IMG/VR virus record: IMGVR_UViG_3300035182_002586
Coordinates: 124,001 to 188,000 of that record
DNA: 64,000 nucleotides
Direction: 5' to 3' (one strand)
A model generated the notes under the pieces. The model was not told the origin of the DNA. It saw nothing but the letters and a program-made list of their open reading frames with translations, and searched no databases. Positions 276 to 51,013 of this stretch are shown here, one piece after another. A program made the position numbers and the translations under genes. Each line of letters begins with the position of its first letter. Positions within the stretch are counted from its first letter, which is position 1.

Positions 276-902
276 TCAGTGGTAGTCGTAGCGAAGACCG
301 AGCTGATCCCACTCGTGCGTCAGCTCTTGCATCGTCATGTTCGCGGCCTTGGAGATGTTGTCCTTGAGCCAGCCGTAGAACAGGATGCCGTCCTTCTTGC
401 TCACGGGTGAGTAGAGGGTGTCCTGACGGTAGCCGTGGGCCGCCTTGCCGGGCGCCTCGATGACGGTGCTGTTGGTCACGTGGAAGTCGTGCGGGCTCGC
501 CTGGATGCGGACGATGGTGCCGTCCGGGAACTTCTTCTCCAGCTTGATGGTGGTCCCCGGCGGCTCGACGTCGATCCCACGGAGTTCCCGCTCGTGGGTC
601 TCCATCAGCTCCGGGTGGTCCGCCTTGATCTTCTCCAGGTGTGACTTCGCCTGGTCGTAGTTCATGTGCAGGATGGAGGTGACCGCCTGCTTGAGGATCC
701 GGTCCGCCATCTCGTCGTTGAGCGTGTGCGGCATCACCGTCAGCTCACGGACCTTCTTGCCCCGCTTGCCGGCATTCGTCATGTCGGTGATCCGAACGCT
801 CCCGTGGAAGCGGTGGATCTTGAGGTGCTCGGTGAAGGCGTGTTGCCCCACGTCCAGGCTGGCGGCAAGGAACTTGGCAGCGACTCGGCGGGCGAGGTCC
901 AT
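276..902 (-). CDS. hypothetical phage protein with N-terminal RVAxKF motif
   Basis: ORF from ATG 902 (MDLARRVAAKF); strong codon bias. Confidence 0.75.
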   Translation of the reverse strand: MDLARRVAAKFLAASLDVGQHAFTEHLKIHRFHGSVRITDMTNAGKRGKKVRELTVMPHTLNDEMADRILKQAVTSILHMNYDQAKSHLEKIKADHPELMETHERELRGIDVEPPGTTIKLEKKFPDGTIVRIQASPHDFHVTNSTVIEAPGKAAHGYRQDTLYSPVSKKDGILFYGWLKDNISKAANMTMQELTHEWDQLGLRYDYH

Positions 903-925
903 GCCCACACCCCGTGATAAGACCT

Positions 926-1222
926 CTATCGCCCTACGCTGACCAGGGCGTCGTCGATCTGGTCCGGGTCCAAGCGGAAAGGACCCGGACCCCCTGCCCC
1001 GGGAGCCCAACCGGCCAGGACCCCTCGCCGGACCAGGGCCTCCACCTCGGTCGTTCCGATGGCGTCACATCGACGTACATCCACCGTGGCCACGAGGCAG
1101 CGCCCCGGGAACGCCTCCACCTCGATCGTCACGTTGAGACAGGGGGCCGCCCTCTTGGTGACCAGGAAGCGGTAGGAGGTGGTGTCGACGGTCAACCGCC
1201 GGCTGTGGTTAGGCAGGGTCAT
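926..1222 (-). CDS. hypothetical protein
   Basis: ORF preceded by GGTGTA motif 11 nt upstream. Confidence 0.55.
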   Translation of the reverse strand: MTLPNHSRRLTVDTTSYRFLVTKRAAPCLNVTIEVEAFPGRCLVATVDVRRCDAIGTTEVEALVRRGVLAGWAPGAGGPGPFRLDPDQIDDALVSVGR

Positions 1223-1261
1223 GCCCTAGCTACTACACCTTTTATCGCCCCCGCAGGGGTG

Positions 1262-1600
1262 ATGGCCTACTCCTACGACCACCGGACCCGCACCGCTGCC
1301 TTCAACATCTCGAAGGTGGTCATGGACATCGACGTTGACCTCTACCCCGAGAAGCTCTCCTGGACCTCAAGTGGGAAGGTCCTCATGACGGGGGTGGCCG
1401 AGTTCGTTCTCCCCAACCGCAAGCACAAGAGCAAGCCCTACGAGCTGGAGACCTCCGAAGACGGTACGGTCCAGCAGTGCAAGTGCGAAGACCCTATGCA
1501 TCGACAGATGATCTGGATCGCCGCAGACAAGCGCAAGCGCGAGCTGGCCGAGCTGATCGAGGACCAGAAGCAGCGGGGCGGGCTCCGTCGCAAGCCCTGA
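1262..1600 (+). CDS. hypothetical protein
   Basis: ORF from ATG 1262 (MAYSYDHR); codon bias. Confidence 0.7.
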   Translation: MAYSYDHRTRTAAFNISKVVMDIDVDLYPEKLSWTSSGKVLMTGVAEFVLPNRKHKSKPYELETSEDGTVQQCKCEDPMHRQMIWIAADKRKRELAELIEDQKQRGGLRRKP

Positions 1601-2635
1601 TCAAACCCGGTTGATGTAGCGGCTGACGACTCTGTGGGCGATCGTGGCGTTTTTCGGGCGCGTGCTGGCCTTGCCGAGCGCCTCTATCGCCTGCTGGAAG
1701 TCGTCCGGTACCTTCCACGCGTTCTCGTTGGGGAACCCGTGACCAACCCCGTACTGGTCTAGCAGGGCCCGGACTGTCTTCACGGAACGGTCGATCTGTG
1801 CGACTGCCTCCGCTTCGACTTTGCCCTTGAAGGGGGTGTAGAAGTCTTTGAACGAGATCACCTGCTGGTGGGCGTCGCTGTACTGCTCCGCGATGTCGAA
1901 GGGGATGGCCATCCCCTCGTTCGTGTAGAGGAGCGTCATGAGCTTCGCCGACTCGGCGTACAGCTTGATGAACATCGCCGTGTAGTCGTGGGCGGCTACG
2001 TGGACCGCCTTGATCGACTCGATCGACGAGTGTGCCGAGGCCACCTCAATCGCCTTCTTGAGGCCGTTGACGCGCGCCCCGAGGCGGAGCGCCATGGACG
2101 AGAGCACCGTGCAGAACGCCTCCACCTTCTTTGCCACGGTCTTGTCTGAGGGCTTCTCACTCGTCTGTGTCACGTGTTCGGCAGTCTTGTGAAGCGTGTC
2201 CACGGAGTGCGCGAACGTGTGAGTGAGGAACTCGTGCGCGTCCAGCCTCCACGGGGGGGTGAACGTGCCCTCGACCTCTCCCATGGCCCGCTCGAAGATG
2301 CGGGTACACGCCGACATCTCCCTCTGGATGATGGCAATGTTCGCCCGCAGTTCTTCTGCCCGCTTCTTCTCCTCAGGGTCGCCGACCCTCTCGGTGCGGT
2401 CGTTCGTGCGCTTGCCCTCTAGGACTTCCTTCGCGACGTTGACCTCCACCATCTTCCGGTGGTCACCGCCACGGTCCGGGTGGTGTTCGATCGACTTCGC
2501 ACGCCACGCCTTGTTGATCTCGGTGTCGGTGGGGTTGTAGTGCGGCGGGAACCCCAAGATCTCCTTGGCGTCCTCGACGGTCAACGCAATCCGAAGCCGG
2601 TGGGCGAGAAGGGTGCGGCGGTGGAGGTCCATCAC
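1601..2635 (-). CDS. J-domain (DnaJ-like) protein
   Basis: AKEILG...EINKAWR...HHPDRGG...EVNVAKEVL, a J-domain with HPD. Confidence 0.8.
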   Translation of the reverse strand: MMDLHRRTLLAHRLRIALTVEDAKEILGFPPHYNPTDTEINKAWRAKSIEHHPDRGGDHRKMVEVNVAKEVLEGKRTNDRTERVGDPEEKKRAEELRANIAIIQREMSACTRIFERAMGEVEGTFTPPWRLDAHEFLTHTFAHSVDTLHKTAEHVTQTSEKPSDKTVAKKVEAFCTVLSSMALRLGARVNGLKKAIEVASAHSSIESIKAVHVAAHDYTAMFIKLYAESAKLMTLLYTNEGMAIPFDIAEQYSDAHQQVISFKDFYTPFKGKVEAEAVAQIDRSVKTVRALLDQYGVGHGFPNENAWKVPDDFQQAIEALGKASTRPKNATIAHRVVSRYINRV

Positions 2636-2649
2636 TACCCCGGTCGGAT

Positions 2650-2694
2650 AAGAGGAACTATTGCAGAGCCCGGAAGAGGAACTATTGCAGAGCC
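2650..2694. repeat. direct duplication of aagaggaactattgcagagcc (21 bp, 24-bp period)
   Basis: Copies at 2650-2670 and 2674-2694. Confidence 0.9.
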
Positions 2695-3002
2695 AGGCTA
2701 AGCCCCCGGCACAACCGCTTAGCCTCCCTCCCCGGACCCAAAGCGATGGCTGTCAGCTCGTCTTGCCGATCGGGTTCATAGAAGGCTGCCACCGGGAGGC
2801 CGTATTGCAGAGCGCGCTCCAGGAGGTCGTCCAGAGACGCCTCATTCTGGACGGTGAGCATCGCCAGCGTGTTCGAGGTCTCGTACCAAACCTTGTCCTT
2901 GTCCGGGTGGGTAGCCGACCATTCACGCAATGCATGGGCCGCCTGCACCGCCTGGTGTTGAGGGGGGAGATCGGCACGGGTGATGAGTCTGAGCTTGTCC
3001 AC
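2682..3002 (-). CDS. Pth2-like peptidyl-tRNA hydrolase family protein
   Basis: LITRADL...QAVQAAHA...FYEPD...LTAIALGP pattern; GTG start inferred. Confidence 0.7.
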   Translation of the reverse strand: MDKLRLITRADLPPQHQAVQAAHALREWSATHPDKDKVWYETSNTLAMLTVQNEASLDDLLERALQYGLPVAAFYEPDRQDELTAIALGPGREAKRLCRGLSLALQ

Positions 3003-3376
3003 GACTATCCTTCGTACACGCCGGTGACCGGCGGGCGGTGGGCTGCGAAACGGTTCAGAGCCTTGGGGAGGGTGGTGGCCCAAGCCGCGAGCTTGAAGTG
3101 CTTGCCGCTCGGGTCCACGCAGTTGATGCGGATCCCCGCGATCGGGAGAACCCTACGGACCCAGTTGAATGGGCGGCCCGCACGCCGGGTCGCCGCATCT
3201 CGACACGCCTTGCAGGTGACGCCTGTGTGGCACCCCCAGCATGTGTCGAACCAGAGGTCCAACCCATGGACAGGGCAGTAGTTCGTATGCTCTTCTCCGC
3301 ACACGTTGATCTCCGCACACGTTGATCTCCGGCACGTGGTCACACCCACACGTGCTGGGGTACTTGAGTTCGGGCA

Positions 3377-3979
3377 TCACTGGTCTCCGTAGACTTCCTC
3401 GACCTGCTCCCGGGCCCTGGCCGCAGAGCGCTCGAAGTGCATCTGGACGGCCCCAATGATGGCCTCGGGGATGCCCGCCGAACGCATCTGCTCTTCCCAC
3501 CCCGCACTCGGGATGTCCCCGCCAAACATGGGGTCGGCCTCGCCCACCCAGAACATCGCCGGGTCGCTGTAGACGTTGCCGTTGGGCGTCTCCAGGTAGG
3601 GCCAGACCTCCAACGGGCTATCTCGACAACAGCCGCAATTACGGCGAAGATCGAACCGATCGACGCGACCGTTCACCTCCTTCGTGTAGAAGGCGATCTT
3701 CTTCCAGCGGCCTTCCTGACGGAGAAGCCCAGGGAACTCCGCGAAGAGAGCGGCGAGCTTGTCAGCTTCCTCCAGCTTGGTCGCAGCTTCCTTGCGAAGA
3801 CTCTCGATCTGCCGAGGAACTGCGAAGCGAACGGCGTCCTCCTGGTCCTTGCGGATCTTCTCCCACCGAGCCTTCTCCTCGGCTTCCTTCGCCTCGCGCG
3901 CAGCCGTCTCCTCGGGGGTTTCCTTCGGGAGGTTGTCCGTCAGCGCCTTCGCGAGACGGCGTACGAGCTTCTTGCTCAT
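3377..3979 (-). CDS. hypothetical protein (CGCC motif)
   Basis: ORF from MSKKLVRR; codon bias. Confidence 0.7.
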   Translation of the reverse strand: MSKKLVRRLAKALTDNLPKETPEETAAREAKEAEEKARWEKIRKDQEDAVRFAVPRQIESLRKEAATKLEEADKLAALFAEFPGLLRQEGRWKKIAFYTKEVNGRVDRFDLRRNCGCCRDSPLEVWPYLETPNGNVYSDPAMFWVGEADPMFGGDIPSAGWEEQMRSAGIPEAIIGAVQMHFERSAARAREQVEEVYGDQ

Positions 3980-3990
3980 GGGCTTGTCGG

Positions 3991-5187
3991 TCACGATGCA
4001 CCTCCGAGCCACGTACGTGCGTACGCGAATGCCTTCTCCATACCCTCGGCCGAGTGCTCGAAGAACTGGTTCTCGACCTTGCCGTCCCGGCGAAGGCACA
4101 ACTTGATCGGACCGACCTTCACACCCCACTCGACCTCGATGCTGTCCTTGCTCTTCCGAGCAATCTCCCGACACCAGCGGGTCTCGCTGACCGTCTCGTC
4201 CGGGCACCACCCCTTGTAGGTGAACCCGATCGAGTCGTGGGAGGCCGGGGTGAAGGGGGCTTCCTTCTCCAGCTTGGTGGTCGTGAGGTAGAGAGGGTCG
4301 GTGGTCTTGAACTCCGCCTTCCACGCCTCGTACTTGCGGTTCGACTCCTCGCGGCGAATCCGGCGGGCCTTCTCCTCTTCGGAGACCCACTCCTCGACCA
4401 GAACGAGCTGGAGCCCCTCGCGCTTGAACGCCTTCGTGGCGTTCACCGTGGCAGGTTTCTCCGTCTCGTCCTCGTCGTCATCATCGTCATCGCTGTGGTC
4501 CATCGTGTCGAAGCACTTGATGGAGCCGTCGGTCCCGAACTCCGGCCAGCGATCGTCGTCGTCGATGTAGGTCTCGTCCCCGTCGTCCCCGATGACCTTG
4601 AGCATCGGCCACCCGGCCATGGGGTCGGAGAAGTCGTAGAACTGGAACTCGTACGGGCAGGCCCACACGCACCCGGCGACGACCAGGAGCTTCGAGGCCG
4701 CGTCGTACCGGTGCTGGACCCAACAGAAGCCGACCCCCTGCCCGGCCTCCGTCGGAAGGTGGTCCCTGCGCGCCCCTGTGTCCAGCTCGATGACCGTCTG
4801 CCCTTGATAGTCCTCACCACAGACGAGGAAGTCCCCCTTCGGGTGATTCTCGACCCACGAGAACGGGAACGAGCCGTAGTTGCGCTGGACCTCGGCCATC
4901 GGGGTGTCGGACCCGATGGCGTAGACGAGCCCCTGAGAGTAGCTCCACGACCCCGGCGACGTGGCGAACGGGGTCACCACGAGCTTGTACTTCCCCGAAG
5001 GGGAGACGTGCTCCTTGCGAGCCTCGACGTTCGCGTTCTCCGGGACGAAGTACGCCGCCTTCCGCATCTTACGGTACGCGCTCTGAACCTCTTTCGGGAG
5101 GGCCTTGAACGCTTCGCTCAGAGCCTCCTTGGTGAGAGACGCCGCCTTCTCCACGAGCGCGTGGGCCTGGTCGAGCATGGTGGACAT
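3991..5187 (-). CDS. hypothetical protein (beta-rich)
   Basis: Long ORF, ggagg RBS, coupled to the upstream gene. Confidence 0.75.
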   Translation of the reverse strand: MSTMLDQAHALVEKAASLTKEALSEAFKALPKEVQSAYRKMRKAAYFVPENANVEARKEHVSPSGKYKLVVTPFATSPGSWSYSQGLVYAIGSDTPMAEVQRNYGSFPFSWVENHPKGDFLVCGEDYQGQTVIELDTGARRDHLPTEAGQGVGFCWVQHRYDAASKLLVVAGCVWACPYEFQFYDFSDPMAGWPMLKVIGDDGDETYIDDDDRWPEFGTDGSIKCFDTMDHSDDDDDDEDETEKPATVNATKAFKREGLQLVLVEEWVSEEEKARRIRREESNRKYEAWKAEFKTTDPLYLTTTKLEKEAPFTPASHDSIGFTYKGWCPDETVSETRWCREIARKSKDSIEVEWGVKVGPIKLCLRRDGKVENQFFEHSAEGMEKAFAYARTWLGGAS

Positions 5188-5621
5188 CACGCCACCTCCG
5201 CCCGAACGAAGGGCTTCTTCTCGCGCACCGGGACCGGGATCGCCCCCTCCGGGTCCGCGAGCCACGCCTCGATCCGGCTGCCCTTCTTGACCCGCCAACT
5301 ATCGAGCATGTCCCCTGCGAACTCGGGGATGTGCTTCGCGAGCACCTGCGTCAGCGTCACAGCGCTCGGCATGTTGTGTTCGTAGAACCGGCCCGCCTCG
5401 GTACGCGAGTAGCCGAGTTCGTCCGTCGGGCACCAGGCATCCGACGCGAGCTGCTGGATCTTGTGCGTGCGCTCGATCCGGCGGAACTTGAAGCCCCGCA
5501 CGAACCCCCACGCGAGGTTCCGGTAGCGATCCGAAATGCTCTGGTCCGAGCGGATCGCCTGATGAATCGCCTTCACGGACGCCTTCTCGGCGTCGCTCAT
5601 CTCCCTGTAATTCTCGAACAT
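5187..5621 (-). CDS. hypothetical protein
   Basis: ORF with purine-rich RBS (gaggaggcagga). Confidence 0.7.
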   Translation of the reverse strand: MFENYREMSDAEKASVKAIHQAIRSDQSISDRYRNLAWGFVRGFKFRRIERTHKIQQLASDAWCPTDELGYSRTEAGRFYEHNMPSAVTLTQVLAKHIPEFAGDMLDSWRVKKGSRIEAWLADPEGAIPVPVREKKPFVRAEVA

Positions 5622-5771
5622 GGTCCTGCCTCCTCGTTGTCTCGACGGTTGCGTTGCGCGAACCGGAGAACGGGGCGGACCACGGGGGAGGTGCAGTTAG
5701 TGGTGCATGGCCACTCCATCCTGAGGCGTACCCGGAAAGTTGTCAACTGCTCTTGGTGTACGTCCACCCCC

Positions 5772-6152: not shown

Positions 6153-6162
6153 GGGCCTCACC

Positions 6163-11638: not shown

Positions 11639-12751
11639 TCATAGCTTGGCGAAGAGGTCCTCGAACTCTCGCGGCATCGACATCCCGAGGACGTGGTGGG
11701 CAAACGCCTCCGCGAAGTTCTCGGTCGGCTTCGTGGCCCCGTAGGGGGTCACCGCAAGCGGCCCGTGCAGCAGCTTGTCCGTCTGGATCTCGACGTCCTT
11801 GTGGCCCATCGCCTGGGTGATGAACGCCTCGTCGGTCAGCTTGCCGGCGAGGTAGGCGGAGGTCTCTTTCCGGATGTCGATCCCCGTCACGGGGGAGGAA
11901 GAGAACCAGAGCATCGCCTCGTTGGAGAGGGTCGGCATCTTCGTCCCGTTCTGGCGTGCCTTCACCATGGCGAGAGCTTCCTCCGCGACCTGCTTGCGGA
12001 GCGCCGCGTGGAAGACGACCTTCTCGAACTCCTTGCGTGTCGAGAGGCTCCAGAACTCCTTGCGAAGCGTGGCGTCCTTGAAGAACTTCGCGTCGTAGCG
12101 GTGCCCGAACTCGTGGATGATCGTGTACACGTCGGAGAACCGCTTCCGGGCGCGGACGCTCAGGTGAACGGTGTCGTCGGCGCCCACGTAGTGGGCGGCT
12201 GTCTTCGCACCCAAGTGCGTGGAGAAGTAGACCATTCCGTAGAGGACTTCGGGGAACCTCGACCGGATCTTGCCCGCAGCTTCCGCGAGGGCCTCCAACG
12301 CTGCGTCGGTCTCGGCCTTCGAGACTCCCGGCATCGGGGTGATGGTGAAGCCGTCTCGGTGAAGGACCCGCTCCTCGTCCTCAGCCTCCGAAGCGATCTC
12401 CAGGGTCCTGAGACGCTTGGCCCAGGCTTGAAGCTGCATGACCACGTAGCTTCGCCAGTTGGGGTTCCGCTCGTATCCCGGGTGTGTGGGGTCTAGGAGC
12501 TTGAGGATGCTCTCCCCGTCGTAGACGAGCTTCTTGAGGGCGTTGCGCTTCGCTGTGCCGAGGGCATTGAACCAGGGGGAGGGGATGTTGCCGCCTCCAG
12601 GCAAAATCGTGTCACACACCTGGTGGATGAGCGCCTTCATGGGCTTCTCGTCCCCGTGAGCTTCGTAGTCCTGGAGCGCCTTGGCGTACTCGGGGATGAA
12701 GCTCTTGGCGACGAGGAACCGGTGGGCTACCCGCTCGACCAGGCTCGTCAC
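11639..12751 (-). CDS. zincin-like metallopeptidase domain protein with N-terminal RVAHRF motif
   Basis: IIHEFGH and TPYGATKPTENFAEAF; GTGA overlap start. Confidence 0.75.
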   Translation of the reverse strand: MTSLVERVAHRFLVAKSFIPEYAKALQDYEAHGDEKPMKALIHQVCDTILPGGGNIPSPWFNALGTAKRNALKKLVYDGESILKLLDPTHPGYERNPNWRSYVVMQLQAWAKRLRTLEIASEAEDEERVLHRDGFTITPMPGVSKAETDAALEALAEAAGKIRSRFPEVLYGMVYFSTHLGAKTAAHYVGADDTVHLSVRARKRFSDVYTIIHEFGHRYDAKFFKDATLRKEFWSLSTRKEFEKVVFHAALRKQVAEEALAMVKARQNGTKMPTLSNEAMLWFSSSPVTGIDIRKETSAYLAGKLTDEAFITQAMGHKDVEIQTDKLLHGPLAVTPYGATKPTENFAEAFAHHVLGMSMPREFEDLFAKL

Positions 12752-13371
12752 CACGTGAAGTTCCCGTCGCCCTTCTTCATGCGCAGGCCCGAGAGGATGT
12801 AGGGCCCACGTGCAAGGGAGGCGAAGAGACCGCCGGCCCACCGCTTGCGCTCGTAGTCGGACATGTCGTGCAGTGCTCGGTCGCGACGGTGCGCGATGTT
12901 GTACGCTGCGGACTTGATCATGTCGTCGCGGAACTCGCCCCAGTACGGCGCGTGCGCGATGAGCCACGTCGTGTAGTCGACGAAGCCCTCCTCGTAGAAG
13001 GGGTCACCTTCCGGGAACTTCGAGAGACTACCGTGGGTGAACTCGTGCGTGAGCTTCTCCAACGTCTGCCCGGGCTTGCCCTCGACGCTCTTGCAGATAC
13101 GGGTCTGCCCCGAGAGCATGTCGAAGCTCGCCGTTGCGCCGGCCACGTGCATCCCCGGGGGAAGAGGGAGGATCTCCGAACGGGGCTCGGTGCCGTACTC
13201 CCCAAGCGCCTGCTCCACGAAGGCGTGGATGCGAGGAGCCCACGCCTCCACGAAGCTGTTCCACTCGGGGCCAAAGACCTTGCACGTGAACGCGCGGCGG
13301 GGCGCGGAGGCGGCGTCTTCGGACGCCTTCTTGAGCATCGCGTGCACGTGTGCCGGAAGTTCGTGGTCCAT
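12748..13371 (-). CDS. HExxH metallopeptidase-like protein
   Basis: LTHEFTH...FYEEGFVDY gluzincin-like pattern. Confidence 0.7.
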   Translation of the reverse strand: MDHELPAHVHAMLKKASEDAASAPRRAFTCKVFGPEWNSFVEAWAPRIHAFVEQALGEYGTEPRSEILPLPPGMHVAGATASFDMLSGQTRICKSVEGKPGQTLEKLTHEFTHGSLSKFPEGDPFYEEGFVDYTTWLIAHAPYWGEFRDDMIKSAAYNIAHRRDRALHDMSDYERKRWAGGLFASLARGPYILSGLRMKKGDGNFTW

Positions 13372-19508: not shown

Positions 19509-20126
19509 TCACGCCTTCGCCTTCGCCTTCTTGGCGGTGACCTTCGGGGGCTTGACGGCGATGGTCGTGTCCGTCTCGAAGCGCGGTACACCGATCTGGT
19601 CGATGATCCCGTGCCTCTTGGCCTCGCGAGCGTTCATGAACCAGTTCACGTTCTTGCGCTTGTCCAGCTCCTTGCGGAAGTAGCCCTTGGTCTTGCCGCA
19701 GTTGTCGTCGAGGCGGGCGAAGCACTTGTCGTCGTCGTTCAGGTCACTGGTGAGCGCCGCGGAGTTCTCCCGGAGCTTGTCCGTTGGGATCGACGAGATG
19801 GACTCGTGTACCATGATCTTCGCCCCGGGGGCTGCCCACCGCATCCCCTTGGTGCCGGATGCGAGCAGGTCGGCTCCCGCAGAGAGGGCCTGGCCCAAGC
19901 AGATGGTGGCGACCTTGATGTCGCTCTCCTCTGCCGACCTAATGAGATCCTGCATCGCGAGCAGGTGGGCCACGGAGCCCCCCTCACTCATGATGTACAG
20001 GGGGAGGACGCCCTGGGCCTCTTCGAGACAACGCTCGATGCGACGATGAAGCCGTCGCACCGTGTCATCGTCGAACTCGTAGACCCAGACGTCGAGCAGC
20101 TTGGGCGACCACGCGGGGGCTTTCAT
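19509..20126 (-). CDS. clpP: ClpP-like protease proteolytic subunit
   Basis: YIMSEGGSV, GQALSAG (catalytic Ser), IMVHE (His), WFMNAREAKRHGIIDQI. Confidence 0.85.
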   Translation of the reverse strand: MKAPAWSPKLLDVWVYEFDDDTVRRLHRRIERCLEEAQGVLPLYIMSEGGSVAHLLAMQDLIRSAEESDIKVATICLGQALSAGADLLASGTKGMRWAAPGAKIMVHESISSIPTDKLRENSAALTSDLNDDDKCFARLDDNCGKTKGYFRKELDKRKNVNWFMNAREAKRHGIIDQIGVPRFETDTTIAVKPPKVTAKKAKAKA

Positions 20127-30969: not shown

Positions 30970-31311
30970 ATGCTCAACGAGAACGTGCATGAGCCTCCGC
31001 TCCACGTCCGGCACGCGACCTTGGAGCGCCTGTCTTCGGACAGCGAGTTCAAGGTCCACTGCCCTGCGTGTACGGACGGCCTACTCATCGTGAGCCGTAA
31101 CCTCGATCGCGTCATCTCGTCGCTGGATCGCTGCATCTCTTGTGGGCAGGTCATCGTCTACGAAGACGAGACGATCGCGCACGAGAAGGTGCGTCGAATG
31201 CCCGAAGAGGCTGTGCGGGAGTACGCCGAGGGGTACGCAAAGGTCCTCGAAGGGAAGGCCCCCAAGAAGACCTCCCTGTGGGACCGTCTGCTGGGAGACG
31301 AAGACCTCTAG
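30970..31311 (+). CDS. zinc-ribbon protein
   Basis: CPAC...CISC; ggagg RBS. Confidence 0.65.
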   Translation: MLNENVHEPPLHVRHATLERLSSDSEFKVHCPACTDGLLIVSRNLDRVISSLDRCISCGQVIVYEDETIAHEKVRRMPEEAVREYAEGYAKVLEGKAPKKTSLWDRLLGDEDL

Positions 31312-38953: not shown

Positions 38954-39023
38954 CGAGGTAGGGCGCAAATCCTCTTGTGGTTCCCGTCCCATAGCGGTGC
39001 GCCGCTCCAGGAGCCACAAGACC

Positions 39024-39827
39024 ATGGACCACGCCACCCTCACTCGCCGTGTCGCCCACCGCTACGTCTCTGAGGTGCGCTCGAAGATGGCCTTCATCTC
39101 GGTGGATCCCAACAACGGGAAGCACGACATCGAAGCCGAGCTGAAAAAGGGCGAGGCTGGTGTCATCAAGGCACTCGCGACGGCCAAGAAGGCCGTGGGC
39201 GAGGTCAACAAGTTCGAGCACGAGGCTCGCAAGCTCCACGACGAGGCTGCGGCCGCCCTCACCGAGATCGCCAACAAGCTCGACACGCTCCCCGGCAAGA
39301 ACATCCCGGCCATCGCGGCCGAGACCCGGAAGCATCTCGCTGAGCTACACGGGCAGGACTGGAAGGCCGCCCTTGGCACCGAGTCGGGCGTCGTCCAGTG
39401 GGTCATCCGCGTCTTCGGGGACCTGAAAAAGGCCGCCGTTCGTCAGAAGGGCAACCCCGGGTACATCGAGCTAGGGCAGATCATCCAGGGCAAGCTCGGA
39501 CCCGTCAACGCACAGCTCCGGGCGATGTCGGACAAGTTCGAGGCGGAGTTCGAGGCGTACGGTAGCTCGATTGTGGGTGACCTCACCTACGCCGAGATCC
39601 TGATCCCGTCCGGGCCCTACGGTCACCCGGAGATGGTCGGTACCCTGGATGGGCACACGCACTACAACGACCTCCACGACAGCGTGACGCGCGAGGCTCG
39701 CTACCTCCTCAACCAGCCGAGCAAGATCGATGTGACGCTCGCGAAGGTGGAGCACGAACTCGGGGCCATGCTCGCCCACTTGAAGCAGACGCAGGCGGAG
39801 TTTCAGAAGCACATGTACGGGAAGTGA
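39024..39827 (+). CDS. helical protein with N-terminal RVAHRY motif
   Basis: MDHATLTRRVAHRY; aggag RBS. Confidence 0.75.
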   Translation: MDHATLTRRVAHRYVSEVRSKMAFISVDPNNGKHDIEAELKKGEAGVIKALATAKKAVGEVNKFEHEARKLHDEAAAALTEIANKLDTLPGKNIPAIAAETRKHLAELHGQDWKAALGTESGVVQWVIRVFGDLKKAAVRQKGNPGYIELGQIIQGKLGPVNAQLRAMSDKFEAEFEAYGSSIVGDLTYAEILIPSGPYGHPEMVGTLDGHTHYNDLHDSVTREARYLLNQPSKIDVTLAKVEHELGAMLAHLKQTQAEFQKHMYGK

Positions 39828-44791: not shown

Positions 44792-44796
44792 TTCTT

Positions 44797-44873: not shown

Positions 44874-44897
44874 CTCCACGGTGTAGTTGCGCGCGCG

Positions 44898-45236
44898 ATG
44901 ATCAAGCGCCTCCACGCCGCTTCCGCAAGGTCCTACGCGGAAGCCCTCACAGACCACGAGCACCAGGCGTGGGTTGCTGCGGACATTGTGGTGGAGCGGG
45001 CTTACGGCTTCGTCTGCCTCGTCTGCGAGCTACACGTCACGATCCCTCGGAACGTGATCCTCGATACGCGGAACAACGCGTTCGCCAGGATCCTCTACGA
45101 CAGGTATCGGACCATGGCGAGTCGAGAGGGGTTGCTCGGTTGCCTCCGTGCAGCAGTAGAAGCCACTCGACCGCCCCCAGATGTGCCCCCTTCGAGAGAC
45201 CTGTACTCCAGACTACTCGACGACGATGCGCTCTAG
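44898..45236 (+). CDS. hypothetical protein
   Basis: GGTGTA upstream. Confidence 0.6.
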   Translation: MIKRLHAASARSYAEALTDHEHQAWVAADIVVERAYGFVCLVCELHVTIPRNVILDTRNNAFARILYDRYRTMASREGLLGCLRAAVEATRPPPDVPPSRDLYSRLLDDDAL

Positions 45237-45427: not shown

Positions 45428-45489
45428 GGCGAGGACCCTCCGTTCAACCGCACTACGGAGATAAGAGGATCGTCTCGCAACAGCTCAGC

Positions 45490-46401
45490 TCAGTCGTGTA
45501 CGCAGCGGAGCTGCATCACCTTGTCCGTCGATTCGACCCACTCTCCCACGGAGACATCAATCGCGACTCCGAGCCCGGCGGGCGTGTGGTCGCTCGTCCA
45601 GTATTGAGTGCTCGCGGTCGCGTACGTAGTCGGGAGCTTGAGAACCGCATCGGCATCCGGCGCGTAGCACGAGGTCTGCTTGTAGCTGGTCCCCCACGGC
45701 CCCGGCCCCGCGACTTGCGCGACGATCGCCGACCACTCGGCCTTCGTAGGTACACGCCACCCACCCGTCCCGTACTTCCCCGAGCAAGCACTCGCCGCGT
45801 TCGCTTGCGTGGACCCGTAGGTCGAGAGGTACTTGAAGTCACTGTTCGCCCACGTGATGCCGGTCTTCGTGTCCTTGACAGCGAACCCGTCCGGCGACTT
45901 GGTGTCCGTCACGCTCATGAAGCGGCCCGACGCCGTACACGAGCACGTCGCCTTCGCCGTACCACCGTCCGGCGTCGTATCGAGGCAAGCGTAGTTGCAA
46001 ACGCCCCCCTTGGTCACCCACGAGGTGGTCCCCGTCGTGCTGTCTCCAACGCACTGCTCCAACTGCGTGCCCGTACAGCGACTCGCCCCGGGCGTGCAGG
46101 CGACGGAGCCCGCGTCTCCCGTGCCGGTGTCGACCGTGCCCGTATCGGTCCCGGTGTCGACCGTCCCCGTATCGGTCCCGGTGTCGACCGTGCCCGTATC
46201 GGTCCCGGTGTCGACCGTCCCCGTATCGGTCCCGGTGTCGACCGTGCCCGTGTCCCCCACCTCGGTGGTGCCCGTGTCGACCGCCCCCGACTCCTGACTG
46301 TCGGCGTCGCTCACAGGGTCCGCGAGGTTGAAGTCCGCACTGGAGCAACCCAGGGCGGTCAAAGTCAGCACACACAGGATGTAGGTCAACTGCTTGGGCA
46401 T
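45490..46401 (-). CDS. lipoprotein with DTGT repeats and a C-terminal DUF1566-like domain
   Basis: Lipobox ALGC; VKDTKTGITW...WRVPTKAEW...YWTS...LRCV. Confidence 0.8.
   Translation of the reverse strand: MPKQLTYILCVLTLTALGCSSADFNLADPVSDADSQESGAVDTGTTEVGDTGTVDTGTDTGTVDTGTDTGTVDTGTDTGTVDTGTDTGTVDTGTGDAGSVACTPGASRCTGTQLEQCVGDSTTGTTSWVTKGGVCNYACLDTTPDGGTAKATCSCTASGRFMSVTDTKSPDGFAVKDTKTGITWANSDFKYLSTYGSTQANAASACSGKYGTGGWRVPTKAEWSAIVAQVAGPGPWGTSYKQTSCYAPDADAVLKLPTTYATASTQYWTSDHTPAGLGVAIDVSVGEWVESTDKVMQLRCVHD
46124..46251. repeat. 30-bp tandem coding repeat (DTGTVDTGT)
   Basis: About four copies of ccggtgtcgaccgtNcccgtatcggt. Confidence 0.9.
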
Positions 46402-46570
46402 GGGGGTCTCCTCATGCCTTCTACAATCGTGCCAAGACGCTGATCCATCGGGCATTCCTTGTCTGAGGGTCTAATTCCAGTTCATCCCGGCGCAAGGACT
46501 CGTTCTCACTAGGTTTTTGACCGAGAGGGCCCCCCAACTTCGCGGATCCTTCTTTCAGCCGTCGAGAGGC

Positions 46571-46843
46571 ATGAGCGCCGATCGCGTTGCCGCCCGCTTC
46601 CGCACCGCCAAGTTCGATGCCGTCACCTACAAGGCGGGCGAGGCTGAGGAGTTCCTCCGCAAGGCGTACCTCGCACTGCACTCGTTCAAGTTCGGCCTCG
46701 ACGAGATGGAGGAGATCCCCTCCCACCTCAAGCCGATCTACGACCAGATGATGAAGGTGCTCGGCCACATGCACCCGGTGCAGCAAGAGGCCCACCAGCT
46801 CACGCAGATGACCTCGAAGATGCTTCGGAACATGGGTCGCTGA
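46571..46843 (+). CDS. small helical protein with N-terminal RVAARF motif
   Basis: MSADRVAARFRTAK. Confidence 0.72.
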   Translation: MSADRVAARFRTAKFDAVTYKAGEAEEFLRKAYLALHSFKFGLDEMEEIPSHLKPIYDQMMKVLGHMHPVQQEAHQLTQMTSKMLRNMGR

Positions 46844-46866
46844 TCCGGCTCCGGGTGTAGAAGTGC

Positions 46867-47607
46867 GTGGTGACCCACGCACGCAGGGCCTATCTCCAGA
46901 AGCGGGACGACGGCGAGTTCATCACCGAGAGCACATACGCAGCGTGGGACGGCTTCCGTCTCATGGGGCTCGAAACGATCCCCTTCGTGAGGATGGAGGA
47001 GCTGGACACCCTAGGTCTTGCCCCGGACACGATCGTCCAGGGGTGGATAGGGTCGGTTCGCTACGCCCTCTCCCGCCTCGGGGTCCCGGACCCGCATGTG
47101 CCAACCATGCCGGACGAGATCCTGCCCTTCGCGGGCCGGAGGATCTGGACGACGACCCTCGGAGAGTTCCGGGCCGGTGACCGGAAGGCGTTCATCAAAC
47201 CGCTCACGAAGCACAAGCTCTTCACGGGGCACGTGTCGAGCGGTGACCTGAACGACCTCATCCAGACTGCTAACTTCGAGGACGACGTGGTGCTCCTGGC
47301 TTCCGATCCGGTCGATTTCGTCGTCGAGTACCGGACGTTCTGGAGCCGTCGCAAGTGTGTGGGTTCCCGGTTCTACCGGGGAGACTGGCGCAAGAGCATC
47401 GACTACGAGATCGTCGAGCGGGTCGGTGCGGCGTTCACTTCGGCTCCCGTCTCGTGCTCGATCGACTTCGGGCTCACCTCCGACGGCCGGACCTTGCCTG
47501 TGGAGGTCAACGACTTCTTCGCCCTCGGAAGCTACGGCTTCTCGCATGTCCCCTACGCGCAGATGATCGAGGACCGTTGGCTGGAAATGGTCGGGGCTTC
47601 GGTGTAG
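46867..47607 (+). CDS. ATP-grasp domain protein (DUF4343-like)
   Basis: FIKP...KLFTG, EYR, IDFG.....T..VEVND. Confidence 0.8.
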   Translation: MVTHARRAYLQKRDDGEFITESTYAAWDGFRLMGLETIPFVRMEELDTLGLAPDTIVQGWIGSVRYALSRLGVPDPHVPTMPDEILPFAGRRIWTTTLGEFRAGDRKAFIKPLTKHKLFTGHVSSGDLNDLIQTANFEDDVVLLASDPVDFVVEYRTFWSRRKCVGSRFYRGDWRKSIDYEIVERVGAAFTSAPVSCSIDFGLTSDGRTLPVEVNDFFALGSYGFSHVPYAQMIEDRWLEMVGASV

Positions 47608-47615
47608 GAGGGGTT

Positions 47616-47882
47616 GTGACCGACAAGGAAAAACTGGACCGGGCCGAGGCGGCAGCCGCTCATGCAGCCATCGAGGCGTTCACGACCACCTTCGCCAAGG
47701 CTCTGGAAGTACAGGGGGTTGAGAACCCTCTGTCGCTGATGGCGGGAACCACGCACGTGCACCACAGCCTCGCTCTGGAGGCCGGGGACCACATTGTCGT
47801 GCAGTTCGTCGTGCGGTTCACCAAGGACCCGGATCTCGTCGAGAAGATCCTCGCCACCACGCGTAAAGCGGGTACTGCGTAG
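47616..47882 (+). CDS. hypothetical protein
   Basis: GGTGTA/ggagg upstream of a GTG start. Confidence 0.6.
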   Translation: MTDKEKLDRAEAAAAHAAIEAFTTTFAKALEVQGVENPLSLMAGTTHVHHSLALEAGDHIVVQFVVRFTKDPDLVEKILATTRKAGTA

Positions 47883-47910
47883 CGCCCACAGGTGTAGTAG
47901 ACGGAGCCCC

Positions 47911-48903
47911 ATGAAGCTCCGTGTTCTCCTGTGTCTGGCTCTTGTTGGGTGTTCGACTCCCTCGGCACCGGCTGCCTCCGTGGACGCCTCCGCTGGAGAG
48001 GCCGGCTTCGACGCGACTCCAGCGGACACAGGCCAAGACACTGCGAAAGCGGAGGTCGCCCCACCCCCCGAGGACTTCTCCAAGGTGTTGGGGTGGTTCG
48101 AGTCTGTCTACGGGGCGGGGGGCAACAGAGCCAAGAACGTGGAGCGAGCTGCGACCCTCCTCGACGGGACCCATATCGGTCCCGGAGAGACGTTCTCGTT
48201 CAACGCCACCGTGGGCCCGAGGACGACCGCGCGAGGGTTCTTCGTCGCCCCTGTCATCCAAGACGGTGAGATGGTTGAGGGCCTCGGTGGGGGCGTCTGC
48301 CAGGCAAGCTCGACGACCCATGCGGCTGCGTTGATGGCCGGACTCGACATCGTGGCCAGGACCCCGCACTCACGCCCTTCGGCGTATATGCCTCTCGGCC
48401 TTGATGCGACGGTGAACTTCCCACCGGAGTGTGGCGGGGATCCCAACAGCACCGCAAAGGGGTGCTACGCCCTCGATCTTCGCGTCAAGAACAGCTCAGA
48501 CAAGGCGGTGGTGATTCACACCACCACGACAGTGGACCCCAAGATCAAGTCACGAGCGACCTTGCGCGTCGAGATCCTCGGCAGCGTCGAGGTCGCCCGA
48601 CCGACGTATACGTACGGCGCTCAGACGAACGGCTCGTACGAGCGACGCTTCAAGAAGGTCGACGGCAAGCCTGAGGGGTACCACAAGCGATCGCAGAAGG
48701 GCTCGGACGGCCTCACGGTCTTCTCCACTCTCACCTCACCTGCGTCTGACGGGGGTGTGGCAGCAGTTCGACGGTACTCCTCGAAGTACCCGCCGACGGA
48801 TGAAGTGTGGGAGGTGTCGAACGACTGGCCTGAGGACACGCTCCCGTGGGAAGCGGCGCAGGACGCAGGCGTGGATGCGGCGACGGACGCCGCGCACGAC
48901 TAG
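47911..48903 (+). CDS. VanW family lipoprotein
   Basis: PGETFSFNATVGPRT, GLGGGVCQASST, HS.PSAYMPLGLDATV. Confidence 0.9.
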   Translation: MKLRVLLCLALVGCSTPSAPAASVDASAGEAGFDATPADTGQDTAKAEVAPPPEDFSKVLGWFESVYGAGGNRAKNVERAATLLDGTHIGPGETFSFNATVGPRTTARGFFVAPVIQDGEMVEGLGGGVCQASSTTHAAALMAGLDIVARTPHSRPSAYMPLGLDATVNFPPECGGDPNSTAKGCYALDLRVKNSSDKAVVIHTTTTVDPKIKSRATLRVEILGSVEVARPTYTYGAQTNGSYERRFKKVDGKPEGYHKRSQKGSDGLTVFSTLTSPASDGGVAAVRRYSSKYPPTDEVWEVSNDWPEDTLPWEAAQDAGVDAATDAAHD

Positions 48904-49184
48904 ACGACGGGCTTGAAGTCGGCCATCCAGCGCGTGATGTTCTCGCGTTGGAACTCGAACTCCGGAACCCACAGCGTCTTCCGGGCGACCTCCAAGAGCG
49001 ACGGCTCCGTGTCCGCCACGTGTTGCAGGAAGCCCCCGAAGAAGCACGCGATGAGCATTGCTGGGGGTAGGTTGAGCTTGACGTCTTCGCCGAGACACTC
49101 GCGACGCAGAAGAGCTTCGGCGAGTGCACGCCCAGCATCGGGCGGTGAAGTGTTCGTGTTGACGAACCGACTAGCTACGTGCAT
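48900..49184 (-). CDS. small STAS-like protein
   Basis: GGTGTA upstream; fold assignment tentative. Confidence 0.5.
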   Translation of the reverse strand: MHVASRFVNTNTSPPDAGRALAEALLRRECLGEDVKLNLPPAMLIACFFGGFLQHVADTEPSLLEVARKTLWVPEFEFQRENITRWMADFKPVV

Positions 49185-49244
49185 GTGTGCAGAGTACACC
49201 GCACACGCGAATCCCAATCGACTTCTTGTAAGACCCTAAGGTTG

Positions 49245-49487
49245 ATGGGAACTCGACCCCTTCGGTCCACCAAGCAACCCCACCGTCCCGCCGCGAAGCA
49301 GCCTCCCGAGGAGAGGGAGCCGAAGAAGCCGAAGAAGCAGCTCGAAGAAGTGTGCAAGGAGATGCGGAACACTCTTTGGGAGGAGCGCAGGAAGCGCGAG
49401 GCCAAAGAGGAGGAAGCCCGCCAACGCGTGCTGGAAGATGCGGTGATGGAGCAGATCTACGGACCGACCTGGCGTAGCACCGGCTGA
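49245..49487 (+). CDS. hypothetical protein
   Basis: Charged ORF. Confidence 0.5.
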   Translation: MGTRPLRSTKQPHRPAAKQPPEEREPKKPKKQLEEVCKEMRNTLWEERRKREAKEEEARQRVLEDAVMEQIYGPTWRSTG

Positions 49488-49508
49488 TCACGGTGTGCGT
49501 ACCGGGGC

Positions 49509-49886
49509 ATGACCCCGAGCGAAGCGAAGGTAGTCTGTGACCGAGCGCTCACGATCGTGAGCGCTCTCACCCCTCCTGTCTCTTCAGAGCGCGAGGCACT
49601 ACGCCAGCTCTTCCGAGAGGCGCGTGAGACTGCCAAGAGCGAGAACGTACCCATGTACCGATGGGCGTTCGGGCTCCTCTACGACTCGCTCACGTGGACA
49701 ACGACGCCGCTCGATGCTCGGGCCCTTGATGGCCTTACGGCGGCGCTCACCCTCATCGGGTCGGAGACGTACAACAACTACTTGGCGGGGGTCACCGAGA
49801 TCCTCCGCAAGCACGAGATGGAGACCATGCACCGGGCCCTCGCGGATGCCATCCTGGCAACCGCAGAGGAAGTGCAGGACGACTAG
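49509..49886 (+). CDS. hypothetical protein
   Basis: ORF; codon bias. Confidence 0.65.
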   Translation: MTPSEAKVVCDRALTIVSALTPPVSSEREALRQLFREARETAKSENVPMYRWAFGLLYDSLTWTTTPLDARALDGLTAALTLIGSETYNNYLAGVTEILRKHEMETMHRALADAILATAEEVQDD

Positions 49887-49933
49887 GAGGGTGGGATGGC
49901 GAAGTTGAGCATACGCGCGGGACGCAACATCTC

Positions 49934-50005
49934 CCGCGCGTGGGGCTGGTAGGCCCCAGGAATTCTTATCAATTTCCGGACCGGGTTCGATTCCTGGCGC
50001 GCGGA
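49934..50005 (+). tRNA. tRNA-Ile(TAT)-like
   Basis: ccgcgcg/cgcgcgg acceptor, D and T arms, weak anticodon stem with cttatca loop. Confidence 0.6.
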
Positions 50006-50006
50006 C

Positions 50007-50336
50007 TCAAGGGAGGCGGTGGATCGGGTAGGGGTCCCCCCGACGCGGGTGTGGATCCGCGAGCAATGGGTAGATCTCTTCGTCGGGGTACAAACTGCTC
50101 ACCCTATCCGTCCTCTTGACGGGCGGCTCGTCCTCCGGTGAGGGTGCCAGCGCCGCGTGCAGAACCATCTCGATGCCGTAGGCGAGCAAGCTCAGGATGA
50201 CGGCGTAGAGGGTGACTTTCCACAGGGTCCCCCAGAGCGGGAATCGGCCCTGCCTCTTGTGCCACGTCACTCTGAGGAGAGGGATCGTCAGCAAGAGGGT
50301 GGCACCAACCTGGGAGAGGAGCCCTAGGAACTGCAT
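50007..50336 (-). CDS. small membrane protein
   Basis: Two hydrophobic segments. Confidence 0.55.
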   Translation of the reverse strand: MQFLGLLSQVGATLLLTIPLLRVTWHKRQGRFPLWGTLWKVTLYAVILSLLAYGIEMVLHAALAPSPEDEPPVKRTDRVSSLYPDEEIYPLLADPHPRRGDPYPIHRLP

Positions 50337-50437
50337 AGGCTCACCCTAAGGTGACTCACAAGGGCTTTGACGTGTAAGGGTTGGTTGTACAGCCCACCCT
50401 CATGTATTCGAGGTTCTTCCTTTCAGGGGTCGTAGCC

Positions 50438-51013
50438 GTGATCAAGCGCCTCTGCGTTTTCGACTTCGATGGGACTCTGTTCCGCAGCCCCGAACGCCCC
50501 TCTTGGTGGCCCCACGCTGGTTGGTGGACACACCCCGGGTCGTTGAACCCGCCCTGCGTGCCCGAGACCCCCGGAGACGACTGGTGGGTTGCTCCCACGC
50601 TCCAGGCGGCGCAGCAGGCTCTCGCGGACGATGAGACGTACACGGTCATGCTGACCGGCCGCCTTGGGGAGCGGTTCGACGGCCGCGTGCGGGCCCTGGT
50701 GAAGCAGACCGGGCTGGAGTTCGACGAGTTCCACCTCTGCGACTCCGACGACTCCATCGCGTGGAAGACCGGGCAGCTCCGCGCCCTCCTCAAGGCCCAT
50801 CCGGACGTCGAGGTTGTCGAGGTGTGGGAAGACCGCACCGAGCAGCTCCGCACGTTCCGTGCGGTCGTGGGGGAGGCCGGGCTGGAGTTCCGCCCCCATC
50901 AGGTGGATGTCGAGCCTCACGCCCTGGTCTGCAAGGGCGATGAGGACGGCAGGCCGGCTGAGAAGTCTGCGGCTGAACGCGTCCTCGAACGGTTCCTTGC
51001 GCGCAACGGGTAA
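50438..51013 (+). CDS. HAD phosphatase, Swiss-Army-Knife RNA-repair-like
   Basis: VFDFDGTLFRSP, WW...SL, VMLTGR, K, WEDR. Confidence 0.82.
   Translation: MIKRLCVFDFDGTLFRSPERPSWWPHAGWWTHPGSLNPPCVPETPGDDWWVAPTLQAAQQALADDETYTVMLTGRLGERFDGRVRALVKQTGLEFDEFHLCDSDDSIAWKTGQLRALLKAHPDVEVVEVWEDRTEQLRTFRAVVGEAGLEFRPHQVDVEPHALVCKGDEDGRPAEKSAAERVLERFLARNG

What the first reader, a model, noticed from the sequence alone, without database searches (positions are those of the whole stretch)
276..51013. Shared terminal peptide motif RVAx[RK][FY] on unrelated proteins: possible virion-packaging signal
N-terminal cases: RRVAAKF (902), ERVAHRF (12751), RRVAHRY (39024), DRVAARF (46571) and, more weakly, LLAHRL (2635). 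C-terminal cases: HRVVSRY (J-domain protein) and ERVLERF (HAD phosphatase). The carriers are otherwise unrelated and mostly lack the GGTGTA promoter. Inference: a capsid-targeting or processing tag, analogous in concept to the T4 internal-protein targeting sequence. It would imply that a co-chaperone, a peptidase and an RNA-repair phosphatase are injected with the DNA.
Basis: partly seen in the sequence, partly recalled or inferred. Interest (0 to 1): 0.6.

Follow-up and report, generated by a model that had tools for sequence, protein, structure and literature searches.

The report
Portable terminal address tag in huge phages
A 529-kb phage and its relatives attach the same short helix (…L-A-x-R-V-A-x-R-F/Y-L…) to the ends of about twenty unrelated enzymes made together with the head proteins; it looks like an address label, most likely for loading them into the capsid, but the receptor has not been shown.

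Summary
All six clear sites are where stated. Across the 528,957-bp phage genome, RVA.[RK][FY] occurs 12 times, 10 of them within the first 20 residues of a protein. Looser forms lie in the last ~18 residues of six more proteins. Genes outside the window give an independent test (p = 1.5e-5). Three related huge-phage contigs (capsid protein 91-94% identical) show the same terminal enrichment. A more distant relative has a weaker, shifted form, and the isolate Tunturi_5 has none.

The tag is a ~13-residue amphipathic helix that behaves as a separate module:
- Orthologues of one carrier usually keep it, sometimes in tandem, while the most distant ones lack it.
- In fusion proteins it sits at domain junctions.

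Carriers include topoisomerase IB, a HAD phosphatase, a 2H phosphoesterase, a J-domain protein and four HExxH peptidases. None has the GGTGTA box. Eight of 17 sit directly behind a second box (CCTCTTGT) that also precedes the head, packaging and lysis genes.

My best reading is a capsid-loading tag (confidence ~0.45). The main rival is docking on a phage-encoded ClpX, whose gene lies among tagged genes (~0.25). No receptor was demonstrated.

The parts
861..896 (-). N-terminal tag (LARRVAAKFLAA, residues 5-16) of gene 276-908, 210 aa, no known family
   Evidence: no Pfam or PHROG match
1604..1642 (-). C-terminal tag (IAHRVVSRYINRV-stop) of J-domain protein 1601-2632, 343 aa
   Evidence: DnaJ domain at residues 24-73
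2594..2614 (-). weak tag-like N-terminal stretch (TLLAHRL) of the same J-domain protein; below threshold
   Evidence: not found by the profile scans
2648..2655 (-). P2 box CCTCTTAT, 15 nt before the start codon of the J-domain gene
12707..12745 (-). N-terminal tag (SLVERVAHRFLVA, residues 4-16) of HExxH metallopeptidase-like gene 11639-12754, 371 aa
   Evidence: AF2 model has helix 5-16 at pLDDT 65-75 against >92 for the body
19509..20126 (-). ClpP-like protease gene (context for the ClpX rival); found only in this genome
   Evidence: PF00574, 78.9 bits; no homologue in five relatives
38971..38978 (+). P2 box CCTCTTGT upstream of tagged gene 39024-39827
39036..39074 (+). N-terminal tag (TLTRRVAHRYVSE, residues 5-17) of gene 39024-39827, 267 aa, no known family
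46548..46555 (+). P2-like box CCTTCTTT, 15 nt before the start codon of gene 46571-46843
46574..46609 (+). N-terminal tag (SADRVAARFRTA, residues 2-13) of small protein 46571-46843, 90 aa
50417..50424 (+). P2-like box TTCCTTTC before the HAD phosphatase gene
50966..51010 (+). C-terminal tag (SAAERVLERFLARNG-stop) of HAD phosphatase 50438-51013, 191 aa
   Evidence: PF10307 HAD_SAK_1, E = 2e-17

Best explanation
The motif is the core of a portable, ~13-residue amphipathic docking helix with consensus S-[LI]-[AV]-x-R-V-[AV]-x-[RK]-[YF]-L-x-A. A short flexible link joins it to the N-terminus, the C-terminus or a domain junction of at least 17-20 otherwise unrelated proteins per genome. It occurs in a clade of 360-530 kb phages whose capsid protein is related to that of Bacillus phage G.

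I take it to be an address label that lets enzymes made late, together with the head proteins, bind a common site inside the assembling head (the major capsid protein or the scaffold). They would then be enclosed and later delivered with the DNA.

Shown: the tag exists, it is terminal, modular and conserved, and its carriers share a promoter class with the head, packaging and lysis genes.

Inferred: that this promoter class is late, that the tag binds a head component, and that the carriers are in the virion.
For: 1. Terminal enrichment in this genome, reproduced independently in three related contigs: 8-10 N-terminal against 1-2 internal hits each at profile score >=14.

2. Modularity.
- About 45 of 60 orthologues of the HExxH peptidase keep the N-terminal tag, five carry it in tandem, and the most distant lack it and begin directly with the domain.
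- In AF2 the tag is a separate helix of lower confidence.
- Orthologues differ in having or lacking the tag.
- In fusions the tags sit at domain junctions: G005_111 at residues 179, 667 and the C-terminus; W02_555 as HAD|tag|topoisomerase IB. This genome has the two enzymes as separate genes, each tagged.

3. Co-regulation.
- 8 of 17 terminal carriers sit directly behind the box tCCTCTT(G/A)TC, against 30 of 716 other genes (odds ratio 20, p = 4e-7). None has GGTGTA.
- Tagged genes of the relatives show similar boxes.
- The same box stands before the run 422-421-420-419-418 (head maturation protease) and before 417 (Gln-rich, scaffold-like)-416-415 (major capsid protein).
- It also stands before the run that holds a tagged 134-aa protein, the large terminase and the portal, and before an endolysin, an endonuclease VII and a 'head protein'.

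4. Tags within head and packaging modules.
- The large head-module protein (index 422 and its orthologues) carries the tag at residues ~58-73 in three genomes.
- The small tagged protein next to the terminase is conserved in all four close genomes.
- Topoisomerase IB lies beside the terminase in G001 and G003.

5. The major capsid protein is a conservation outlier: 92-94% identical among these genomes, while no other shared protein exceeds 68% on average, with portal at 59% and terminase at 49%. This fits a hub contacted by many partners.

6. Precedents, from my own knowledge: the T4 capsid targeting sequence, the C-terminal tail of the HK97 protease, and encapsulin cargo peptides at either terminus.
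Against: - There is no proteomic or structural evidence that any carrier is in a virion. The nearest isolate, Tunturi_5, has no tags.
- That the second promoter class is late is inferred only from the genes behind it.
- No conserved protease site follows the tag, and C-terminal and internal tags differ from the T4 case.
- The core head proteins that must enter the head (protease, scaffold-like protein) do not carry the tag; they have conserved tails of their own.
- A phage ClpX gene lies inside clusters of tagged genes, which points to another receptor.
- Capsid protein conservation has other possible causes, such as a very large T number.
Confidence: 0.45

Rival explanations
1. The tag is a recognition or tethering peptide for ClpX, either the phage's own or the host's. 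It would dock on the ClpX N-terminal zinc-binding domain as the SspB tail does. Carriers would then be unfolded or degraded by ClpXP, or would work together with ClpX; for example, the tagged HExxH peptidases could act as its proteolytic partner.
For: - The genome encodes a complete ClpX: C4 zinc finger, AAA_2 domain, GYVG pore loop, LGF loop for ClpP docking, and ~60% identity to cellular ClpX. It also encodes a ClpP-like protein in the window.
- The ClpX gene lies among tagged genes in G000 (indices 72, 74-76), G001 (195, 197, 198, 200, 201) and G003 (464, 468, 470, 471).
- A tagged HExxH peptidase gene is next to clpX in G001, G003, G007/G008, G015 and G016 (coordinates).
- ClpX is present in every sufficiently complete genome of the subgroup with canonical tags. 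It is absent from Tunturi_5, which has no tags, and from LR745208.1, which has fewer, shifted tags.
- ClpX is known to read short peptides at either terminus and in linkers of unrelated proteins, and its N-domain binds the SspB tail RGGRPALRVVK (PMC3983244). This resembles ...ALRVAARF.
Against: - LR745208.1 keeps N-terminal tags without any phage ClpX or ClpP.
- The tag has helical periodicity over ~13 residues and is modelled as a helix, whereas by my recollection the SspB tail binds as a short strand.
- Marking some 20 proteins of the head-gene regulon for destruction has no obvious purpose.
- The phage tmRNA already explains why a phage might carry ClpXP.
- Gene neighbourhood may only reflect a shared late region.
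Confidence: 0.25
2. The tag docks on some other common partner, or the tags bind one another, gathering DNA- and RNA-end-processing enzymes into one complex or body. These would include topoisomerase IB, the HAD 3'-phosphatase, the 2H phosphoesterase, the SprT-like HExxH peptidases and a ParB-like nuclease. The site could be, for instance, the packaging motor.
For: - HAD and topoisomerase IB are one protein in LR745208.1 and two tagged proteins here, with tags at the split point. This is a fusion-type link between carriers.
- Several carriers have two or three tags and could act as cross-linkers.
- Topoisomerase IB lies next to the terminase in G001 and G003.
Against: - Many carriers are small proteins of unknown function with no visible link to nucleic-acid repair.
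- No candidate partner was identified.
- The genome has no Hsp70 and no tubulin that could point to a chaperone hub or a phage nucleus.
Confidence: 0.2
3. There is no common function: the pattern is chance, shared ancestry of the carriers, or a generic amphipathic start of helical proteins. A Tat-type signal (twin arginine) was also considered.
For: Four carriers are paralogous HExxH proteins. Arg- and Ala-rich helices are frequent in a 63% G+C genome.
Against: - Independent statistics inside and outside the window and in three other genomes.
- Apart from the HExxH group, carriers share no similarity beyond the tag.
- The tag is conserved in orthologues that are only 45-60% identical overall.
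- Tat is excluded: the arginines are four residues apart, no hydrophobic core follows, and there are C-terminal and internal copies.
Confidence: 0.05

Closest known systems
Capsid targeting sequence of phage T4 internal proteins (IPI-III, Alt)
   Same: A short amphipathic peptide shared by otherwise unrelated proteins that are made late. If the best explanation holds, it has the same purpose: enclosing proteins that are injected with the DNA.
   Different: The T4 peptide is strictly N-terminal and is cut off by the prohead protease at an L/I-x-E site. Here the tag is N-terminal, C-terminal or internal, often tandem, has no conserved cleavage site, and has an unrelated sequence.
Encapsulin cargo-loading peptides and the C-terminal targeting tail of the HK97 prohead protease
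   Same: Terminal peptides at either end, joined by flexible linkers, that bind the inside of an HK97-fold shell. They are modular and transferable.
   Different: Encapsulin peptides are extended Gly/Ser/Leu-rich motifs rather than basic helices. Here the prohead protease itself has a different conserved tail. No binding has been shown.
ClpX recognition signals (SspB XB tail RGGRPALRVVK; N- and C-terminal degron classes)
   Same: Short peptides at either terminus or in linkers of unrelated proteins, and partial sequence likeness (L-R-V-[AV]). A ClpX with an N-domain is encoded next to tagged genes.
   Different: The tag is longer, helical, and needs a conserved aromatic residue five positions after the Arg. 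It is also present in a relative without phage ClpX. Nothing indicates that the carriers are unstable.
Encapsulation peptides of bacterial microcompartments
   Same: Amphipathic helices of ~15-18 residues at the N- or C-terminus of diverse enzymes, sometimes in several copies, that bring cargo to a protein shell.
   Different: Those peptides are conserved in character rather than in sequence, and the shell is a BMC-domain shell. No such shell genes were looked for or seen here.

Membership tests
T4-type capsid targeting sequence | Short N-terminal amphipathic peptide shared by unrelated proteins | tested here: met
   9-12 proteins per genome carry it within the first 20 residues; helix in the AF2 model. 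It also occurs at C-termini and at domain junctions, which T4 does not show.
T4-type capsid targeting sequence | Removed by the prohead protease at a conserved site just after the peptide | tested here: not met
   Residues after the tag show no common cleavage motif (sequences). C-terminal tags end 5-17 residues before the stop.
T4-type capsid targeting sequence | Carriers are found inside the virion and the peptide suffices to enclose a foreign protein | not testable with these tools
   No isolate or proteome of this clade exists. The nearest isolate, Tunturi_5, lacks the tag.
T4-type capsid targeting sequence | Carriers are expressed with the head genes (late) | tested here: inconclusive
   Shared CCTCTTGT-type box with the head, terminase-portal, endolysin and endonuclease VII genes. 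Timing itself was not measured.
Encapsulin-type cargo-loading peptide | Terminal peptide at either end, joined by a flexible linker, with an HK97-fold shell protein present | tested here: met
   N- and C-terminal copies. The tag has lower pLDDT than the protein body. The capsid protein is related to annotated major head proteins of phage G and Tunturi_5.
Encapsulin-type cargo-loading peptide | Gly/Ser/Leu-rich extended consensus of known cargo peptides | tested here: not met
   The consensus is S-L-A-x-R-V-A-x-R-Y/F-L-x-A with helical spacing.
ClpX recognition or tethering signal | A ClpX with an N-terminal zinc-binding domain is available | tested here: met
   zf-C4_ClpX + AAA_2 + ClpB_D2-small; Cys-x2-Cys pairs, GYVG and LGF present in the sequence; ~60% identity to cellular ClpX.
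ClpX recognition or tethering signal | Sequence belongs to a known class (XB tail, C-motif 1/2, N-motif 1-3) | tested here: inconclusive
   Only partial likeness to RGGRPALRVVK (PMC3983244). The conserved aromatic residue and the helical spacing are not part of any known class.
ClpX recognition or tethering signal | Tag presence follows ClpX presence across genomes | tested here: inconclusive
   ClpX is in all canonical-tag genomes that are complete enough and is absent from tag-free Tunturi_5. LR745208.1 has tags without ClpX.
ClpX recognition or tethering signal | Physical binding to ClpX and ClpX-dependent unfolding or degradation | not testable with these tools
   Needs a binding or degradation assay.
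Tat (twin-arginine) signal peptide | S/T-R-R-x-F-L-K followed by a hydrophobic core and an A-x-A site, N-terminal only | tested here: not met
   The arginines are spaced i and i+4, no hydrophobic core follows, and C-terminal and internal copies exist.

The most novel reading that the evidence does not exclude
A clade of huge soil and sediment phages uses one sequence-specific address helix, usable at either protein end and in tandem, to load around twenty enzymes into the capsid for co-injection with the DNA. The cargo would include topoisomerase IB, nucleic-acid-end repair enzymes, zinc peptidases, a nuclease and a J-domain co-chaperone. Genes would gain or lose virion residence simply by gaining or losing the tag.
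Probability: 0.4. Interest if true: 0.8.

Novelty: new variant of a known kind. Interest (0 to 1): 0.66.

Why it matters
If the tag is a capsid address, the injected protein set of uncultured huge phages can be read straight from their genomes. That would show which enzymes these phages need in the first seconds of infection, and it would give a short peptide for loading foreign proteins into very large capsids. If instead it is a ClpX docking signal, it would be the first phage-wide degron or adaptor code tied to a phage-encoded ClpX. Either way, about 3% of the genes of these genomes, most of them unannotated, gain a shared functional handle. The tag also marks a second promoter regulon.

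Tried and rejected
- Close-relative scan of viral contigs with the single peptidase protein found nothing; the alignment-based scan worked.
- Pfam and PHROGs gave no family for most carriers.
- Foldseek against the PDB with the AF2 model of the HExxH carrier gave only non-significant matches to zinc metallopeptidases, best E = 0.13. I use the HExxH...E motif, not the fold hit, for the name.
- One complex prediction (two copies of the ClpX N-domain plus the tagged N-terminus) returned 'no answer'. It counts neither for nor against binding.
- The representative search for the capsid protein was run to build an alignment for that job and was not used further.
- Literature searches found no description of this tag and no virion proteome for the clade. 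One review only suggests that jumbo-phage ClpX might act as a translocase or assembly aid (PMC7824862).
- Rejected readings: Tat signal, paralogy, N-end-rule degron (the tag is 4-10 residues in and is also internal), generic membrane-binding helix (the sequence is too specific), and phage-nucleus import (no tubulin).
- A prohead-protease cleavage motif after the tag was looked for by eye and not found.


Full report
**What the window is.** The window is bases 124,001-188,000 of a single 528,957-bp virus record at 63% G+C. It holds 53 tRNA genes and a tmRNA.
- The genome encodes a major capsid protein related to those of an uncultured 485-kb phage (LR745208.1, 83% identity), Tunturiibacter phage Tunturi_5 (49%) and Bacillus phage G (39%).
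- It also encodes a portal, a large terminase and a head maturation protease.
- No gene caller was on hand, so I wrote one using codon log-odds, start and Shine-Dalgarno scores, and greedy overlap removal. It gave 733 genes.

**The observation.** The weak LLAHRL case does not reach threshold.
- Genome-wide, RVA.[RK][FY] occurs 12 times in 155,898 residues, and 10 of the 12 start within the first 20 residues, on nine proteins.
- A looser form lies within the last ~18 residues of six to seven more proteins.
- Genes outside the window give an independent test: 6 of 8 hits are N-terminal where 9% is expected (p = 1.5e-5).
- An unbiased count of all gapped four-residue patterns ranks RVA..F, RV..RF and L..RVA among the most enriched in residues 2-22.
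- Gene starts are credible.

**Carriers.** Those with a recognisable domain are:
- a topoisomerase IB, tagged at both ends;
- a HAD phosphatase and a 2H phosphoesterase, both tagged at the C-terminus;
- a J-domain protein, tagged at the C-terminus;
- a weak zinc-peptidase match.

Four carriers share a THE[FLM]GHRY core and are therefore paralogous HExxH peptidases. The remaining carriers share nothing beyond the tag.

**Relatives.** I fetched whole genomes or contigs of five relatives and called genes the same way.
- Three IMG/VR contigs of 363-380 kb, with capsid protein 91-94% identical, each show 8-10 N-terminal tags against 1-2 internal hits at profile score >=14.
- LR745208.1 shows fewer tags, with a shifted core ([LV]-V-D-R-[FY]).
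- Tunturi_5 shows none.
- From 49 terminal instances the consensus is S-[LI]-[AV]-x-R-V-[AV]-x-[RK]-[YF]-L-x-A. Hydrophobic positions are spaced as on one face of a helix, with the two basic residues beside them.

**Modularity.**
- Sixty homologues of the window's HExxH carrier (gene 11639-12754) were found, many on contigs of 160-430 kb. About 45 keep the N-terminal tag, five have two copies in tandem, and the most distant begin directly with the domain.
- An AF2 model built on this alignment is confident (pLDDT 94.6). It shows the tag as helix 5-16 at pLDDT 65-75, followed by a break.
- Clustering all tagged proteins of the five genomes shows families in which some orthologues have the tag and others do not.
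- In fusion proteins the tags sit at domain junctions. G005_111 (1,091 aa) has them at residues 179, 667 and the C-terminus, flanking a topoisomerase IB domain and a third domain. W02_555 reads HAD, tag, topoisomerase IB, while this genome has the two enzymes as separate, tagged genes.
- Tags are also present on more distant members of the peptidase family across some twenty IMG/VR contigs.

**Regulation.** Two upstream boxes dominate this genome.
- The first is GATGGATC...GGTGTA, found before at least 161 genes.
- The second, tCCTCTT(G/A)TC, ends about 14-15 nt before the start codon of about 38 genes.
- No terminal carrier has the first box. Eight of 17 have the second, against 30 of 716 other genes (odds ratio 20, p = 4e-7). 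Others lie directly downstream of a gene that has it.
- The second box stands at the head of the run 422-421-420-419-418 (protease) and of the run 417 (Gln-rich, scaffold-like)-416-415 (capsid protein).
- It also stands at the head of the run from index 95 through a tagged 134-aa protein, the terminase and the portal, and before an endolysin, an endonuclease VII and a PHROG 'head protein'.
- Similar boxes precede tagged genes in the relatives.
- I infer, but have not shown, that this is the late, structural regulon.

**Links to the head.**
- The large protein at the start of the head module carries the tag near residue 58-73 in three genomes.
- The small tagged protein two genes from the terminase is conserved in all four close genomes.
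- Topoisomerase IB lies beside the terminase in two relatives.
- The capsid protein is 92-94% identical among these genomes, while no other shared protein averages above 68%.
- The protease and the scaffold-like protein do not carry the tag and have conserved tails of their own.

**The rival.** Gene index 79 (54555-55877, minus strand) is a full ClpX: zinc finger, AAA_2, GYVG and LGF loops, ~60% identity to cellular ClpX. A ClpP-like gene lies in the window at 19509-20126.
- The clpX gene is embedded among tagged genes in three of the four close genomes.
- It is adjacent to a tagged HExxH peptidase gene in at least five further cases.
- ClpX is present in the subgroup whose capsid protein is >=87% identical. 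It is absent from complete LR745208.1 and from Tunturi_5.
- ClpX reads short peptides at either end or in linkers, and its N-domain binds RGGRPALRVVK (PMC3983244), which partly resembles ALRVAARF.
- Against this reading: tags persist in LR745208.1 without ClpX, the tag is helical and longer, and destroying proteins of the head regulon has no clear purpose.

**Verdict.** The tag is a real, clade-wide, portable docking helix.
- I rank capsid loading first (0.45). The reasons are the shared regulon with the head genes, tags on head-module and packaging-module proteins, the hub-like conservation of the capsid protein, and good precedents.
- ClpX docking is second (0.25), and another hub or self-assembly is third (0.2).
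- No receptor was demonstrated.

Noticed in passing
window 30970-31311 (+) and 44898-45236 (+), C-terminal ends; about 13 more genes elsewhere in the genome: A second, strictly C-terminal peptide motif: [ST]-hydrophobic-W/Y-[ED]-R-[LI]-x-x-[DE]-[DE]-x-L-stop, usually after a Pro-rich linker (for example ...KTSLWDRLLGDEDL). There are 15 proteins with it in this genome and only 0-2 in each relative. The conserved C-terminal tail of the scaffold-like protein (...KLTSLWSSAPDV...) begins in a similar way.
   Followed up: partly
window 2648-2655 (-), 38971-38978 (+), 46548-46555 (+), 50417-50424 (+); about 38 sites genome-wide: A second promoter-like box, tCCTCTT(G/A)TC, ending ~14-15 nt before start codons. 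It is distinct from the GATGGATC...GGTGTA class and stands before head, packaging, lysis and tagged genes. Both classes leave almost no leader and usually no Shine-Dalgarno sequence.
   Followed up: partly
window 14785-52528: 53 tRNA genes covering all amino acids, plus a tmRNA (51160-51517, tag ANDNGTVITALKAAA), interspersed with small genes.
   Followed up: no
window 19509-20126 (-) and G000:C1:54555-55877 (-): The phage encodes both a ClpP-like protease and a complete ClpX. Together with the tmRNA, this forms a full tagging-and-degradation set. ClpP is in this genome only, while ClpX is found throughout the close subgroup.
   Followed up: partly
G000:C1:343027-343959 (-): The major capsid protein is 92-94% identical among genomes whose other shared proteins are 45-68% identical. 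This is an unusual conservation outlier.
   Followed up: partly
LR745208.1 (W02), my gene W02_555; G005 gene 111: Natural fusions of HAD phosphatase with topoisomerase IB. With the tagged HExxH (SprT-like?) peptidases and the 2H phosphoesterase, this hints at a module that handles covalent topoisomerase-DNA ends or broken RNA ends.
   Followed up: no
G000 record as a whole: IMG/VR labels the record 'provirus', and the same protein is seen on a 620,031-bp contig. The record may therefore be a trimmed part of a longer contig. No host-like flank was examined.
   Followed up: no
G001 gene 196 (764 aa) and terminases of G001 and G003 (1,119 aa): ClpX and the large terminase are much longer in some relatives. 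One database ClpX homologue carries homing-endonuclease/intein Pfam domains, suggesting inteins in these genes.
   Followed up: no
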